Below, one piece after another: positions 590 through 64,000 of a DNA stretch of 64,000 nucleotides. The translations under genes were made by a program, and so were the position numbers. Positions within the stretch are counted from its first letter, which is position 1. Every line of letters starts with the position of its first letter. The DNA is from Octopus sinensis (taxonomy: Eukaryota). Where the stretch lies: assembly GCF_006345805.1 (NCBI RefSeq), contig NC_043003.1:17360001-17424000 (forward strand), read 5' to 3'. Below the pieces are notes generated by a model that saw only the letters and a program-made list of their open reading frames with translations, was not told where the DNA came from and ran no database searches.

Positions 590-41874
<41,285 letters not shown>

Positions 41875-54079: not shown

Positions 54080-54118
54080 GTTTTCGAGGAGGAAGTCCAA
54101 AATACTGACCGAGGGAAG
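54080..54118 (+). CDS. Candidate alternative twitchin micro-exon (13 aa, VFEEEVQNTDRGK)
   Basis: cgtttttcactttttccag| purine-rich 39 nt AAG|gtatag; phase 0/0 matches the exon-36 donor; no stop. Confidence 0.55.
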
Positions 54119-56049: not shown

Positions 56050-56280
56050 TAAAACAAGTAAAAGATATATATATATATATAGATAGATATATATATATAC
56101 ATACATACCTATACAACAGGCTTCTTTCAGTTTCTGTTTACCAAATCCACTAACAAGGCTTTGGTCAACCCAAGGTTATAGTAGAAGACACTTGCCCAAG
56201 GTGCCACACAGTGGAACTGAACCCGGAACCATGTGGCTGGTAAGCAATCTATCTACCACACAGCCACTCCTGCACCTATG
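56050..56280 (-). mobile_element. SINE family B, 5' half
   Basis: ggcttctttcagtttc ... cagccactcctgcacctat. Confidence 0.8.
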
Positions 56281-56744
56281 CTATACATATGCACTTTAAA
56301 TGTGTCTATGCGTAAGATCAGAAGCCTGTGATGTGTTCATTCATTCAAACGAAACAAAGAAGAAATAAGTAAACTTCAAGTCCCCAACTATAAAATTGGT
56401 GGCAGCAGGCCATGGGCATTGAGCTAATGGTGCTGGTGTTCACATACTATCAGGATAAGTTAAGACATGATACAGAGCCAAAATCTGAAATGATGATTTC
56501 TAATTTTGACACCTTACACCAATAAAATGTGGAGAGTCATTTAACCATTTTGGAAGCCTCCTGCATTCTCAAACAAGCTGAGGTGTCTTGAATTCATCTT
56601 GTGACACTGGATATAGTATGTAGGAATGAGAAGGTAGATTGATGTGTGCACACATTATTTTCACCAGAAAAAATACGTATGATAATCTCAAATCTACTTA
56701 GACCATCATCATAGTTGATGGGCAAACTATCAATGACAAGTGGG

Positions 56745-60905: not shown

Positions 60906-61160
60906 TGCACGATAAACATTTAATTATAAAAAATATATATGAAGATATTAATCTAGTTATTGGAAATTCTAGTTTGTTATGATACTCAAGTAAAGTAAAT
61001 ATTTATCATAATTTTAAGATCACTTAAAAAAGAAAAAAACCCTAAATTAATATCCACAAATGATAAACTTAACCCCACTCACATTTGGAAGACATTCAGT
61101 GCTTACATAATACCTTATCTCTATACATTCTATAAATACTTTAAAATGTGTTTTTCAAAG

Positions 61161-61355
61161 ATGATGATCAGTGATCAAAGTGATGAATATATCCTTAACA
61201 ACCACAGCAACTACAATTCTACAGAAAATCTTTGGCTCGACCGACATTCCACATGGGTACATTCCAATTGGAAACATTCCACAAGGATACATTCCACAGG
61301 AATACATTCCACTGGGATACATTCCACGGGGATTTACACCAGGTTTTCGGGACTT
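61161..61355 (+). CDS. Candidate alternative twitchin exon (65 aa, HSTGI pentapeptide repeats)
   Basis: gtgtttttcaaag| 195 nt CTT|gtaagt; phase 0/0; only frame 0 is open from this acceptor; repeat variation is mostly synonymous in this frame. Confidence 0.55.
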
Positions 61356-61792
61356 GTAAGTAATAATTACTTTAAAAAAATCAGATCGAAGTTAATGGAT
61401 TTAAGTAGCTCTGTATCCAATTCCTATTTGGGTTAAGGTTTTATGTTCAAAGCTGAACTTATCTGTCCAGAAACTCTTAACATAATATTTCATAAAAGTT
61501 ATATTTGTTAATGATTTCATTGTGATGACAATGTTATTTAAGATGGGAATTTTCTCAGGTACATGTTGAAAAGTTATGTAAATGTGGTTGTGTGTATGTA
61601 TGTCTCTGAGGTATGCATATGTCTTTGTATGTATGTGAGCAAGTGTTAAGATTTTTTATTATATTTAAAGATTTAAGCAGTTTCACAGTTTACACTGATT
61701 TTCAAGTTGAGACAGAAAGATGTGGTTTATGCTGCAACATATATATATATATCAGTTATATATATATATCAGTGTATGTGTGTGTGTGTGAA

Positions 61793-61840: not shown

Positions 61841-64000
61841 TGTGCATGTCTAAGAGCAAAATGCTATGAATTAGTATCATTGTCCAGACAAATTATTTTT
61901 ATGTCCAACAAATAGCTTTTTTTATTATTATTTTTCATTGGGTATTTTATGCTTTAGAAGTCCTTAATAGATTCTCTGAAACTTTCTAAAACTGTCATTT
62001 CTCTTAAATCATCTCGATGTTGAATGATGATGACACATATTGAAATAAAAAATGCCAAGTTTAAACATTACTCTAACTTATACTTAAATGATAGTTAATC
62101 ATAATTACCAGTGTATAGATCAATATTTTTACTGGTTGATTATTGAAGCTTGCGGTATATATAGATGACAAAATAATTTGATTGAATTTAAGAGTTTTCA
62201 AATTGGGGAATTTACACATTGTAAATTTGAGTATAAATTGAACATAATTATATATATATATACACATCTATATTGAAATAGATATTTAAAAATTTAAATA
62301 TTATACTGCAAGTATAAGTTTAGTTAAAAGAATGCAGATAAGTTACAATTTTCTTAGTAAAACAAAATACTTATTTTACCAGTATTTTGTTATGGTTTAA
62401 ACTATGCTTATTAACCCATAGGAGTCACTATCTCTATGCCATTGGAAATCAACAAGATTCCTATAAAATAATAACCAAATCTATGATTCAATACTTAATG
62501 TTTGAAGTAGGTATTTCACCACTGCCTTAGTTTGTATATAAATGAAACAGTTACCCTACTGAAAACAAAACAGTGATATAAAATTAGTTTGTAAAATAAA
62601 TAAGGCACTAACATTAACAACTATAAAAAGGAGGATATATAATTAGACAGTTAAGGATAGATTTACCCTTGTTTGCTAATTGTTAAAGTTTGTTAGAGAC
62701 AATATAAATTGAAATTATAATTTTGTTTCAGCAGTTATGTATCATTTGTGTTGATTGCACACTGATGTCACGAAAAAAAAAACACATATTATTGAACACT
62801 TAATAATAATTGCTGCATGTTTCCTGTCAATAGTTCGCTTCGTCACTACTAATCTCATTAATATTTGTCATTCCGCAGTGGTAACTTAGTAATGTAGCAG
62901 TTTTCTAAAACCAATAGAAAAAAAAATTGTTATTTAGTTGATCAAATTCCTAACACTATTATGAATAGTGGTATTATAATTAACATGATGAACATGAACA
63001 TTATATCATCACTGTCTTATCACCAGTGTCTTTTCATAAACATCATCATAATGACATCCATCGAATCATCATGCTTTTTTAATATTGTCATCATCATCAT
63101 CATCACAAACATCATATTAAGTTACAATGAAAAGAATCAGAATATTTCTGACTATTGATAATAATAATTGTTTCTCAATAATATATATGTTTATTTCCAA
63201 TTGGATGCATATATATATATATATATATATATATACTAGTGATTTATCTAGAGTTTCTTTTAAACCAGTTCCAGAATATTGGAGAACTTTAGCCTACTTA
63301 TGAAAATATCTTAAAACTATATATATATATCTGAATGTAGTTTTATGTCTGAGTTGATTTATAATATTTATACAGAGTAGAAAGGAAAGAATAAAATCAA
63401 AGTATTTGATTTTAAATTGTTTCATAATCAAAAAATATATGATAAAATATTGGCTTTCCTTAAGACTGTAATACTTTCTACAAATTTCATTATATATTCG
63501 TTTATTATTCTTTTTGTTAATGTTATTGGAAAAATATATATTTTAAGATGGATGCATCTGAAGCATCATATTTTTTTAATTAATTATCTTTGAAAAAAAA
63601 AGTTATATATTTATTTGCCTTTAAGAAGTAATATATTGTTTCTGTTCTTAGCAAAATATATATTTAAAATAATAAATGATAACTACAATGTTTTGTTTCC
63701 TTTTCAGAAATGTAATTCTGTTTTAGACTGTTTTTAATATAATTTTCTATTATTTTGGGCTTCTATATATGGGATAGTGTAGTAACATTGAAATAATTTA
63801 TTGGATTAATTTATCAATAATTCTTGTACTTATATATGTGTGTGTACTAAATGAAAAGGAAATAAACTGATGACCAAAAGATGGAAATGTTCCATCGTGA
63901 CTACAAGCATAACTAACTAAAAGAACGGTAGCAATGGGATTGAGATATTGATACAAATAATTTCTTTGGTTTTAATTTGAAGCAGAATAATGAAAATACA

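What the first reader, a model, noticed from the sequence alone, without database searches (positions are those of the whole stretch)
61161..61355. Hidden 65-aa HSTGI-repeat exon, in frame between twitchin kinase and its autoinhibitory tail
Seen: acceptor gtgtttttcaaag|, 195 nt with no stop, strong donor CTT|gtaagt, phase 0/0 matching exon 36 (..HAWLK|). The other two frames from this acceptor stop at once. The peptide is MMISDQSDEYILNNHSNYNSTENLWLDRHSTWVHSNWKHSTRIHSTGIHSTGIHSTGIYTRFSGL. In the six 15-bp repeats CAT TCC is invariant, and much of the variation is silent in this frame (Thr ACA/ACT/ACG, Gly GGA/GGG, Ile ATA/ATT), which suggests selection on protein. Established: twitchin kinase is held inactive by the tail that directly follows the W-L-K helix, together with the N-linker. 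Inference: a cassette exon would insert a Ser/Thr-rich, probably disordered spacer with RxxS/T motifs (RHST, RIHS) at this hinge, retuning auto-inhibition or mechano-activation. I know of no description of such an insert, but I cannot search.
Basis: partly seen in the sequence, partly recalled or inferred. Interest (0 to 1): 0.85.

Follow-up and report, generated by a model that had tools for sequence, protein, structure and literature searches.

The report
Alternative last exon of octopus twitchin
The "hidden exon" is real, but a sister octopus already has it annotated as an alternative final exon that ends twitchin just after its kinase, and the invariant core of its repeat equals six perfect target sites for the muscle microRNA miR-1, so the repeat is not evidence of a selected peptide.

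Summary
The sequence is as described: AG acceptor at 61161, 195 open bases, CTT|GTAAGT at 61355, and six 15-nt repeats at 61244-61333.

The peptide is not new. RefSeq twitchin isoform X8 of Octopus bimaculoides (XP_052825211.1) ends ...HAWLK-VFEEEVQNTDRGK-MMISDQ...FSGL-VSNNYFKKIRSKLMDLSSSVSNTYLG. So the acceptor and frame are in an annotated model, but as an alternative terminal exon. It reads through the proposed donor to TAA (61434-61436). The product lacks the autoinhibitory tail and about 680 C-terminal residues. None of 15 octopus models joins FSGL to the tail.

A real cassette at this hinge is the 13-aa mini-exon at 54080-54118.

The window is O. sinensis-like, yet the 96-codon ORF differs from O. 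bimaculoides at one residue after about 34 My (P about 2e-5 at 3'UTR-like divergence).

- five of six frames are open across the repeat;
- array changes are 4 silent against 6-7 replacement;
- codon usage is intron-like.

The invariant repeat core ACATTCCA is exactly the published octopus miR-1 8-mer response element. It occurs six times, on the sense strand, 15 nt apart. This suggests the truncated-isoform mRNA is a miR-1 target or sponge.

No RNA reads or orthologous DNA could be examined.

The parts
41829..41874 (+). Last exon of the twitchin kinase catalytic core (...[15 protein letters not shown]), with a phase-0 donor AAG|gtaggt
   Evidence: junction 40304->41829 resolved against the O. 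sinensis protein. Identical in all octopus twitchin models.
54080..54118 (+). 13-aa in-frame cassette mini-exon VFEEEVQNTDRGK (phase 0/0), inserted between the kinase core and the autoinhibitory tail
   Evidence: One search gives the sequence cag|GTT...AAG|gtatag. The exon is present in O. bimaculoides isoforms X1 and X3-X8 and absent from X2 and from the O. vulgaris and O. sinensis models. Its codon usage is exon-like at 0.60 bits/codon. Splice scores are 5.1 bits (acceptor) and 4.2 bits (donor).
61161..61436 (+). Coding part of the alternative 3'-terminal exon: 91 codons (MMISDQ...SNSYLG) plus a TAA stop at 61434-61436.
   Evidence: O. bimaculoides isoform X8 (P0246) ends with this peptide, 90 of 91 residues identical. 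GC content is 0.37 against 0.21 and 0.27 in the flanks. Stop codon read.
61146..61436 (+). 96-codon ATG-to-stop ORF (MCFSK + 91 aa), called as a separate 'uncharacterized protein' in the 2015 O. bimaculoides annotation
   Evidence: One search lists the ORF. P0256 = UniProt A0A0L8HMF4_OCTBM is 96 aa and 95 of 96 residues identical.
61244..61333 (+). Six tandem 15-nt units. Each starts with the invariant 8-mer ACATTCCA, which is the octopus miR-1 8-mer response element in the sense-strand RNA and also a TEAD/M-CAT-like motif as DNA. Columns 9-15 are variable.
   Evidence: PMC9699675 data file S3 lists 'Ovu-Mir-1 ACATTCCA'. P(invariant run >=8 given 6 variable columns) = 0.018.
61353..61361 (+). 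Strong in-phase 5' splice-site sequence CTT|GTAAGT inside the terminal exon. It could be a composite-exon donor or a U1-binding element. It is not used in any annotated model.
   Evidence: 9.4 bits, better than 18 of 28 real donors, and only 3 of 1118 intronic GT decoys are as good; no FSGL-GDHS junction in 15 models.
62044..62049 (+). First canonical AATAAA after the stop, 608 nt downstream. It is a candidate poly(A) signal for the truncated isoform.
   Evidence: No AATAAA or ATTAAA occurs between 61437 and 62043.

Best explanation
Window 61161-61355 is the first 65 codons of an alternative, possibly composite, 3'-terminal exon of the octopus twitchin gene. It lies more than 19 kb into the >22-kb intron that follows the last kinase-core exon.

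In the annotated O. bimaculoides isoform X8, ...HAWLK (41874) is spliced to the 13-aa mini-exon (54080-54118) and then to the 61161 acceptor. The transcript is not spliced at 61355. It reads 26 further codons to TAA at 61434-61436.

The product is a 3,981-aa twitchin that ends 104 residues after the catalytic core. It lacks the C-terminal autoinhibitory tail (GDHSNLTHRIPSSRY...SSLRK...) and the roughly 680 residues of Ig and linker domains that follow.

Inferred consequences:
- In C. elegans twitchin kinase, disrupting either inhibitory tail gives partial but significant activity. By analogy this isoform should carry a partly de-repressed kinase that keeps only the N-linker brake.
- The HSTGI peptide itself is probably incidental read-through coding.
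- The constrained element of the repeat is its 8-nt core ACAUUCCA, six perfect miR-1 8-mer sites 15 nt apart in the sense mRNA. This predicts that the truncated-isoform mRNA is strongly repressed by miR-1, or titrates it, in muscle.

Shown: the sequence features, the annotated model, the cross-species peptide conservation and the motif identity.

Inferred: expression in this species, the 3' end, the effect on kinase activity and the miR-1 regulation. I rate the miR-1 part at about 0.3 on its own.
For: - Isoform X8 (XP_052825211.1, P0246) ends ...HAWLK VFEEEVQNTDRGK MMISDQ...FSGL VSNNYFKKIRSKLMDLSSSVSNTYLG.
- An independent 2015 model, A0A0L8HMF4, covers the same ORF.
- The window belongs to the O. 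sinensis/vulgaris lineage. It agrees with O. sinensis at 35 of the 39 sites that separate it from O. bimaculoides, and it has the O. sinensis DAPGIPG variant. That split is dated at about 34 My (PMC10700109).
- The ORF differs at 1 of 96 residues, against 39 of 1949 (2.0%) in the constitutive twitchin exons of the window.
- With a per-site divergence of about 0.058, derived from control 8-mer conservation in aligned octopus 3'UTRs (PMC9699675 data S2), P(<=1 change and no stop) = 2.4e-5.
- Exon-like GC content: 0.37 against 0.21 and 0.27 in the flanks.
- The tail exon is absent from 41875-64000, so the exon sits deep in the intron.
- No other copy exists in the window, and there is only one true protein relative in 5.8 billion and 1.8 billion-sequence libraries.
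- Effect of tail loss on the kinase: PMC8523150.
- miR-1: the core ACATTCCA occurs six times and equals the 'Ovu-Mir-1' 8-mer MRE. Mir-1 is listed under general musculature, suckers and central heart (PMC9699675 supplements).
- The 15-nt spacing lies within the 13-35 nt optimum for paired sites (PMC1874663).
- Repeat-borne MREs in coding sequence can be functional (PMC11317165).
Against: - No RNA-seq reads, poly(A) sites or cDNA could be examined. X8 is an automated model from another species. The O. sinensis and O. vulgaris annotations have no such isoform.
- No canonical poly(A) signal occurs for 608 nt after the stop.
- A top-0.3% donor sits in phase inside the exon, which is what a cassette or composite exon would look like.
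- Codon usage is intron-like: -0.23 bits/codon against 0.14-0.86 for real exons.
- Among the 103 of 120 listed twitchin/projectin cluster representatives in which a kinase end was recognised, none lacks the canonical tail.
- For miR-1: the sites lie in the annotated CDS, where sites are usually weaker. The array can self-pair (-31.5 kcal/mol, z = -2.9), which may occlude the sites. Nucleotide-level conservation of the 8-mers could not be checked. The motif match was found post hoc. The same 8-mer is also a TEAD-type DNA motif.
Confidence: 0.6

Rival explanations
1. In some transcripts the exon is spliced at both 61161 and 61355. It then inserts 65 residues (78 with the mini-exon) in frame between the kinase core and the autoinhibitory tail, lengthening the tether of the tail.
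For: - Phase 0/0 is compatible with both ...HAWLK| and ...DRGK| upstream and with |GDHS downstream.
- The donor CTT|GTAAGT scores 9.4 bits, better than 18 of 28 real donors, with only 3 of 1118 decoys as good. The chance of such a site in phase within a 276-nt exon is roughly 0.015-0.05.
- The only amino-acid difference from O. bimaculoides lies downstream of the donor.
- The neighbouring mini-exon shows that in-frame inserts at this hinge are tolerated.
Against: - No FSGL-GDHS junction occurs in any of the 15 listed members (of 20) of the octopus twitchin cluster, including eight RefSeq isoforms of O. bimaculoides.
- Codon usage is intron-like.
- Differences within the array are 4 synonymous against 6-7 non-synonymous.
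- A 5' splice-site sequence inside a terminal exon can also act only as a U1-binding regulator of polyadenylation (general knowledge, not tested here).
Confidence: 0.2
2. Non-functional cryptic exon. An intronic minisatellite with a weak AG and a chance GT is occasionally spliced in or retained. Annotation pipelines turned this noise into models, and the apparent conservation reflects low local divergence.
For: - The acceptor is weak: 116 of 1225 intronic AGs are as good.
- Five of six frames are open.
- Codon usage is intron-like and no better than frame 2.
- There is no Pfam domain.
- The exon is absent from the O. sinensis and O. vulgaris annotations.
- No nearby poly(A) signal.
Against: - 95 of 96 residues are identical after about 34 My, with the repeat number unchanged. 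P = 2.4e-5 at d = 0.058 and still 8.6e-3 at d = 0.03.
- GC content rises to exon level.
- Two independent annotations place a CDS here.
- Variation is excluded from an 8-nt core that equals a known functional motif.
Confidence: 0.12
3. DNA-level reading. The six ACATTCCA cores (reverse complement TGGAATGT) are a homotypic cluster of TEAD/Scalloped (M-CAT/GTIIC-type) binding sites, that is, an intronic muscle enhancer of twitchin. The exon-like features would then be secondary.
For: - The invariant 8-mer core with a variable 7-nt spacer fits a binding-site array.
- From memory, the core matches the TEAD consensus and the SV40 GTIIC element.
- The host gene is a muscle structural gene.
Against: - Not tested with any motif library here.
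- It does not explain conservation of the whole 96-codon ORF outside the array, nor the annotated splicing into it.
- Orientation carries no information for TEAD, whereas the sites happen to be in the sense orientation that miR-1 requires.
Confidence: 0.08

Closest known systems
Twitchin isoform X8 [Octopus bimaculoides], XP_052825211.1; and UniProt A0A0L8HMF4_OCTBM (96-aa 'uncharacterized protein')
   Same: The upstream junctions are the same (HAWLK, then VFEEEVQNTDRGK, then MMISDQ).
   Different: These are automated predictions in a sister species that split about 34 My ago. Nothing equivalent is annotated in the O. sinensis or O. vulgaris lineage of the window. They show a terminal exon, not a cassette. 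No publication or experiment was found.
Alternative last exons that truncate giant sarcomeric proteins: titin Novex-3, Drosophila sallimus giving kettin, obscurin A versus B (all recalled from memory)
   Same: An internal alternative terminal exon yields a shorter isoform that lacks the C-terminal modules of a titin-like protein.
   Different: Those truncations remove the kinase or fall far from it. Here the cut falls exactly between the catalytic core and its intrasteric inhibitor, so the kinase is kept and its C-terminal brake is deleted.
Engineered C. elegans twitchin kinase lacking the C-terminal regulatory tail (von Castelmur et al. 2012, as summarised in PMC8523150)
   Same: A kinase core that keeps the N-linker but has no C-terminal regulatory tail. 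Disrupting either tail gives partial but significant catalysis.
   Different: That is a recombinant fragment, whereas here it would be a natural splice isoform of the full-length filament protein. Activity of the octopus isoform is untested. The new 104-aa C-terminus has no significant similarity to the regulatory tail.
Repeat-borne microRNA response elements in coding regions (Schnall-Levin et al. 2011; miR-181 targets, PMC11317165) and natural miRNA sponges
   Same: Tandem sequence repeats create many identical seed sites in one mRNA. Here the spacing lies within the 13-35 nt optimum (PMC1874663).
   Different: The known cases are mammalian zinc-finger genes or non-coding sponges. Here the sites sit in an isoform-specific terminal exon of a muscle gene, for the muscle miRNA miR-1. 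Function is untested.
The 13-aa hinge mini-exon of octopus twitchin (window 54080-54118)
   Different: It is 13 residues and acidic (VFEEEVQNTDRGK), has exon-like codon usage, and is already annotated in most O. bimaculoides isoforms.

Membership tests
Alternative last exon (ALE) / composite terminal exon | Its own 3' splice site is joined to an upstream constitutive or cassette exon | tested here: met
   The junction ...DRGK|MMISDQ... is present in the O. bimaculoides X8 model. The evidence is a sister-species annotation, not reads from this species.
Alternative last exon (ALE) / composite terminal exon | An in-frame stop inside the exon, so the isoform has a distinct C-terminus | tested here: met
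   TAA at 61434-61436. X8 ends at the homologous ...TYLG.
Alternative last exon (ALE) / composite terminal exon | A cleavage and polyadenylation site downstream of the stop | tested here: inconclusive
   The first AATAAA is at 62044, 608 nt after the stop, with no ATTAAA before it. No 3'-end data were available.
Alternative last exon (ALE) / composite terminal exon | Transcript evidence in the species of the window | not testable with these tools
   No RNA-seq access. The exact ORFs are not on record in the contig index. The genome tools were shut.
   Phase 0/0. Donor 9.4 bits, acceptor 3.6 bits.
   No 'FSGLGD' junction in 15 octopus twitchin protein models. The models are not exhaustive.
   For: 95 of 96 residues are conserved across about 34 My. 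Against: 4 synonymous to 6-7 non-synonymous changes within the array, intron-like codon usage and five of six frames open. dN/dS needs orthologous DNA, which was not retrievable.
miR-1 response-element array | A perfect 8-mer (seed match 2-8 plus A1) in the sense orientation of the transcript | tested here: met
   ACATTCCA occurs six times on the + strand, the twitchin strand, at 61244, 61259, 61274, 61289, 61304 and 61319. It is identical to the 'Ovu-Mir-1' MRE in PMC9699675 data S3.
miR-1 response-element array | The sites lie in a mature cytoplasmic mRNA, ideally in the 3'UTR | tested here: inconclusive
   The sites lie in the CDS of the annotated X8-type mRNA, with the last site ending 107 nt before the stop. 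The alternative nearby acceptors that would place them in the 3'UTR are poor.
miR-1 response-element array | Nucleotide conservation of the sites, and repression that depends on the seed match | not testable with these tools
   Only the O. bimaculoides protein is available (HST x 6 retained). No orthologous DNA, CLIP or reporter data.
   No second copy in the 64-kb window apart from microsatellite matches downstream. Only P0256 matches the full length in the protein libraries, and the rest are unrelated (HSTPL)n low-complexity hits. A genome-wide DNA search was not possible.
Twitchin C-terminal regulatory (autoinhibitory) tail | Sequence similarity to the canonical tail (RIPSSRYxKIRxKI...SSLRK...PRF) | tested here: not met
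   BLASTP of the 91-aa alternative C-terminus against the canonical octopus tail gives E = 0.16. No Pfam family.
TEAD/M-CAT enhancer cluster | Match to the TEAD consensus, plus occupancy or enhancer activity | not tested
   The resemblance (TGGAATGT) is recalled from memory only. No motif library or chromatin data were used.

The most novel reading that the evidence does not exclude
The conserved function of this exon is RNA-level rather than protein-level. Six cooperative, perfect miR-1 8-mer sites are confined to an alternative last exon, and they make the mRNA for a tail-less twitchin isoform a dedicated miR-1 target. That isoform carries a partly de-repressed kinase. Under this reading it is silenced wherever miR-1 is high (mature muscle) and allowed only where miR-1 is low. 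Alternatively, this abundant muscle transcript acts as an endogenous miR-1 sponge. The in-phase GTAAGT inside the exon would then be the switch between 'splice on to the full-length, autoinhibited protein' and 'terminate here'.
Probability: 0.3. Interest if true: 0.75.

Novelty: new member of a known kind. Interest (0 to 1): 0.45.

Why it matters
Twitchin and titin kinases are studied as autoinhibited mechanosensors. How, or whether, cells ever release the C-terminal brake in vivo is debated.

A natural isoform that ends exactly between the catalytic core and the autoinhibitory tail would give genetic rather than mechanical release. It would also lack the C-terminal domains that, in molluscs, take part in catch regulation (that last point is from memory).

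If the six miR-1 sites are functional, this would be a clear case of isoform-specific microRNA gating of a sarcomeric kinase by the pan-bilaterian muscle miRNA. It could be tested with simple reporters.

Practically, the exon and the 13-aa hinge mini-exon are missing from the O. sinensis and O. vulgaris gene models and should be added if reads support them.

If none of this holds, the finding is an already-annotated minor isoform.

Tried and rejected
So there was no genome-wide copy count and no access to the tail exon beyond the window.
- tblastn of a C. elegans tail recalled from memory, and of 20 retrieved twitchin/projectin tails, found no tail exon in 41875-64000.
- Exact look-ups of the 96-aa and 55-aa ORFs, of X8 and of P0256 in the contig index found nothing on record.
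- The O. bimaculoides gene was found, but its 175-kb range is too long for DNA to be returned. So dN/dS and nucleotide conservation of the miR-1 cores could not be computed.
- The first homology search, with the 280-aa kinase, returned only non-cephalopod fragments because of the length filter. A 5,500-residue stop-free pseudo-query restricted to one exon solved this.
- Pfam found no family for the alternative C-terminus.
- The representative search found only unrelated (HSTPL)n or (HSTGV)n low-complexity proteins besides P0256.
- Rfam gave only sub-threshold hits on the (TA)n tract upstream.
- The local resemblance of YFKKIRSKL to the tail's YNKIRQKI was considered. BLASTP finds no significant alignment between the alternative C-terminus and the canonical tail (best E = 0.16, over a different stretch), so it was dropped.
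- Neighbouring AGs at 61172 and 61181 would stop translation at once and place the array in a 3'UTR, but they are very poor acceptors.
- The projectin and twitchin papers searched gave no description of splicing at this hinge.
- Structure prediction was not run. A spliced construct is not admissible, and a single low-complexity sequence would be uninformative.

Full report
**Observation.**
- ...gtgtttttcaaag|ATG ATG ATC... begins at 61161. Then 195 nt without a stop encode MMISDQSDEYILNNHSNYNSTENLWLDRHSTWVHSNWKHSTRIHSTGIHSTGIHSTGIYTRFSGL, followed by CTT|gtaagt.
- Tandem Repeats Finder reports a 15-nt array of 6.0 copies at 61244-61333, with consensus ACATTCCACAGGGAT.
- The upstream exon ends CTG AAG|gtaggt at 41874 in phase 0 (...[14 protein letters not shown]).

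**Gene context.** The ORFs upstream are the twitchin kinase. A search restricted to one kinase exon, embedded in a long pseudo-query to pass the length filter, found twitchin isoform X2 of Octopus bimaculoides at 100% identity.
- The window itself is not O. bimaculoides. At 35 of the 39 positions where O. sinensis and O. bimaculoides twitchin differ within the 1,949 residues encoded here, the window has the O. sinensis residue. It also carries the O. sinensis variant DAPGIPG.
- No exon for the autoinhibitory tail (GDHSNLTHRIPSSRY...SSLRK...PRF) lies between 41875 and 64000. The intron after the kinase core is therefore longer than 22 kb, and the candidate lies more than 19 kb into it.

**What it is.** The 90%-identity cluster of the O. 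bimaculoides protein holds eight RefSeq isoforms plus O. vulgaris and O. sinensis models.
- One of them, isoform X8 (XP_052825211.1, 3,981 aa), ends ...HAWLK VFEEEVQNTDRGK MMISDQ...IYTRFSGL VSNNYFKKIRSKLMDLSSSVSNTYLG.
But the model does not splice at 61355. It runs on for 26 codons to a stop, which in the window is TAA at 61434-61436.
- The exon is an alternative terminal exon. It replaces the last 681 canonical residues (autoinhibitory tail, Ig domains, Ser-rich linker) with 91 new ones.
- None of the 15 models joins ...FSGL to GDHS....
- The same ORF, from the ATG at 61146, was already a separate 96-aa 'uncharacterized protein' (A0A0L8HMF4) in the 2015 annotation.
It is present between HAWLK and GDHS in isoforms X1 and X3-X7, and absent from X2 and from the O. 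vulgaris and O. sinensis models.

**Is it more than chance?** I built splice-site matrices from 27-28 junctions of this gene resolved in the window.
- The donor scores 9.4 bits. That is better than 18 of 28 real donors, and only 3 of 1118 intronic GTs are as good.
- The acceptor is weak at 3.6 bits, and 116 of 1225 intronic AGs are as good.
- One other open phase-0/0 pseudo-exon with equally good sites exists in the intron (56087-56239, a fragment of a repeated element).
- Sequence signals alone would therefore not have settled the matter.
- The exon region does stand out in GC content: 0.37 against 0.21 and 0.27 in the flanks, and 0.41 in a real exon.
- It is single-copy in the window. Its only true relative in the protein libraries is the O. 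bimaculoides ORF. Other hits are unrelated (HSTPL)n-type low complexity.

- The 96-codon ORF differs at one residue, and the repeat number is unchanged.
- The constitutive twitchin exons of the window differ at 39 of 1949 residues.
- Control (non-seed) 8-mers in aligned 3'UTRs of the two lineages are conserved at about 0.62 (PMC9699675 data S2). This implies about 0.058 changes per site.
- At that rate 12.4 amino-acid changes are expected, and P(<=1 change and no stop) = 2.4e-5. At d = 0.03 it is still 8.6e-3.
- The region is therefore constrained, but the nature of the constraint is open.

- Five of six frames are open across the array.
- Differences from the repeat consensus are 4 synonymous against 6-7 non-synonymous.
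That is no better than frame 2 and below every real exon segment (0.14-0.86, median 0.60). The mini-exon scores 0.60.
- There is no Pfam family and no significant similarity to the canonical tail.

**The repeat core.** All variation lies in columns 9-15 of the unit. Columns 1-8 are invariant, and P = 0.018 for an invariant run of at least 8 given six variable columns.
- The invariant 8-mer is ACATTCCA. On the sense strand this is the 8-mer response element of miR-1, seed GGAAUGU.
- The octopus microRNA study lists exactly 'Ovu-Mir-1 ACATTCCA' among its 8-mer elements. It assigns Mir-1 to musculature (suckers, central heart) and shows that canonical seed pairing operates in octopus (PMC9699675).
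- Only ten copies of this 8-mer occur on both strands of the 64-kb window, and six of them are here.
- The chance that a given 15-nt unit contains this particular 8-mer in the sense orientation is about 2e-4. This is my own arithmetic, and the match was noticed post hoc.
- The 15-nt spacing lies in the 13-35 nt range that gives optimal joint repression (PMC1874663).
- Repeat-borne sites in coding sequence can be effective (PMC11317165, which cites Schnall-Levin 2011).
- Caveats: the array can pair with itself (-31.5 kcal/mol, z = -2.9), the sites are in the annotated CDS, and the same 8-mer read as DNA resembles a TEAD/M-CAT site (from memory).

**Mechanism proposed.** *Shown:* an annotated splice path from kinase core to mini-exon to this exon to a stop.
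*Inferred:*
- Polyadenylation follows somewhere after 61436. The first AATAAA is at 62044.
- The protein keeps the N-linker but loses the C-terminal regulatory tail. In C. elegans, disrupting either tail gives partial but significant activity, and the intact assembly has about 0.5% of maximal activity (PMC8523150).
It could also act as a U1 site that sets the balance between terminating here and splicing on.
- The six miR-1 sites predict isoform-specific repression or sponging in muscle.

**Comparison with what is known.**
- Alternative last exons that truncate giant sarcomeric proteins are a known kind (titin Novex-3, kettin, obscurin; from memory). This one is unusual in cutting exactly at the kinase/tail boundary.
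- A kinase end could be recognised in 103 of the 120 listed twitchin/projectin cluster representatives, and all of those keep the canonical tail. However, isoforms are hidden inside clusters.
- The exon is already in RefSeq and UniProt as predictions for a sister species. It is not in the models of the window's lineage, and I found no paper on it.

**Limits.**
- No reads, no 3'-end data and no orthologous DNA could be obtained. The gene range is too long for the contig tool, and the genome tools were shut.
- Expression in this species, use of the 61355 donor, dN/dS and nucleotide conservation of the miR-1 cores therefore remain untested.

Noticed in passing
window 54080-54118: A 13-aa phase-0/0 mini-exon (VFEEEVQNTDRGK) lies exactly at the kinase/autoinhibitory-tail hinge. 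It is included in O. bimaculoides isoforms X1 and X3-X8 and skipped in X2. It is missing from the O. sinensis and O. vulgaris protein models, although the window encodes it perfectly with AG/GT sites and exon-like codon usage.
   Followed up: partly
window 61244-61333, minus strand: Read on the antisense strand, the array contains UGGAAUGU six times, which is identical to nucleotides 1-8 of miR-1. The sense RNA folds into a long imperfect hairpin (-31.5 kcal/mol, z = -2.9). No Rfam mir-1 match, so it is not a miR-1 gene. Whether the fold matters is unexplained.
   Followed up: partly
window 61362-61400: The read-through part encodes NNYFKKIRSKLMDL, which locally resembles the start of the canonical regulatory tail (SRYNKIRQKIKEKY). 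BLASTP finds no significant alignment between the alternative C-terminus and the canonical tail (best E = 0.16, over a different stretch), so this is probably chance.
   Followed up: yes
window 56087-56299 (+) and 33285-33464 (-): The only other open pseudo-exon with good splice sites in the intron encodes ...[29 protein letters not shown].... A near-identical translated stretch occurs in the opposite orientation in an upstream intron. It is a dispersed repeat (SINE- or TE-like) and a decoy for exon finders.
   Followed up: partly
whole window (exons 568-41874): The window is from the O. sinensis/O. vulgaris lineage, not O. bimaculoides. It matches O. sinensis at 35 of 39 diagnostic residues and at the single A/S site that separates the O. 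sinensis and O. vulgaris models.
   Followed up: yes
outside the window (proteins P0251, P0252): Two O. vulgaris twitchin models end early with a different C-terminus (...SSSSRTTHK SMFNGDLI). This suggests a second alternative terminal exon further downstream in the gene.
   Followed up: no
window 18597-19632 and 17963-18428: Two large intronic arrays: a 21-nt unit x 49 copies (AGTGAGTACATAGACAAATAT) and (CATA)n x 119, between Fn/Ig exons. The window is very rich in micro- and minisatellites (197 TRF rows).
   Followed up: no
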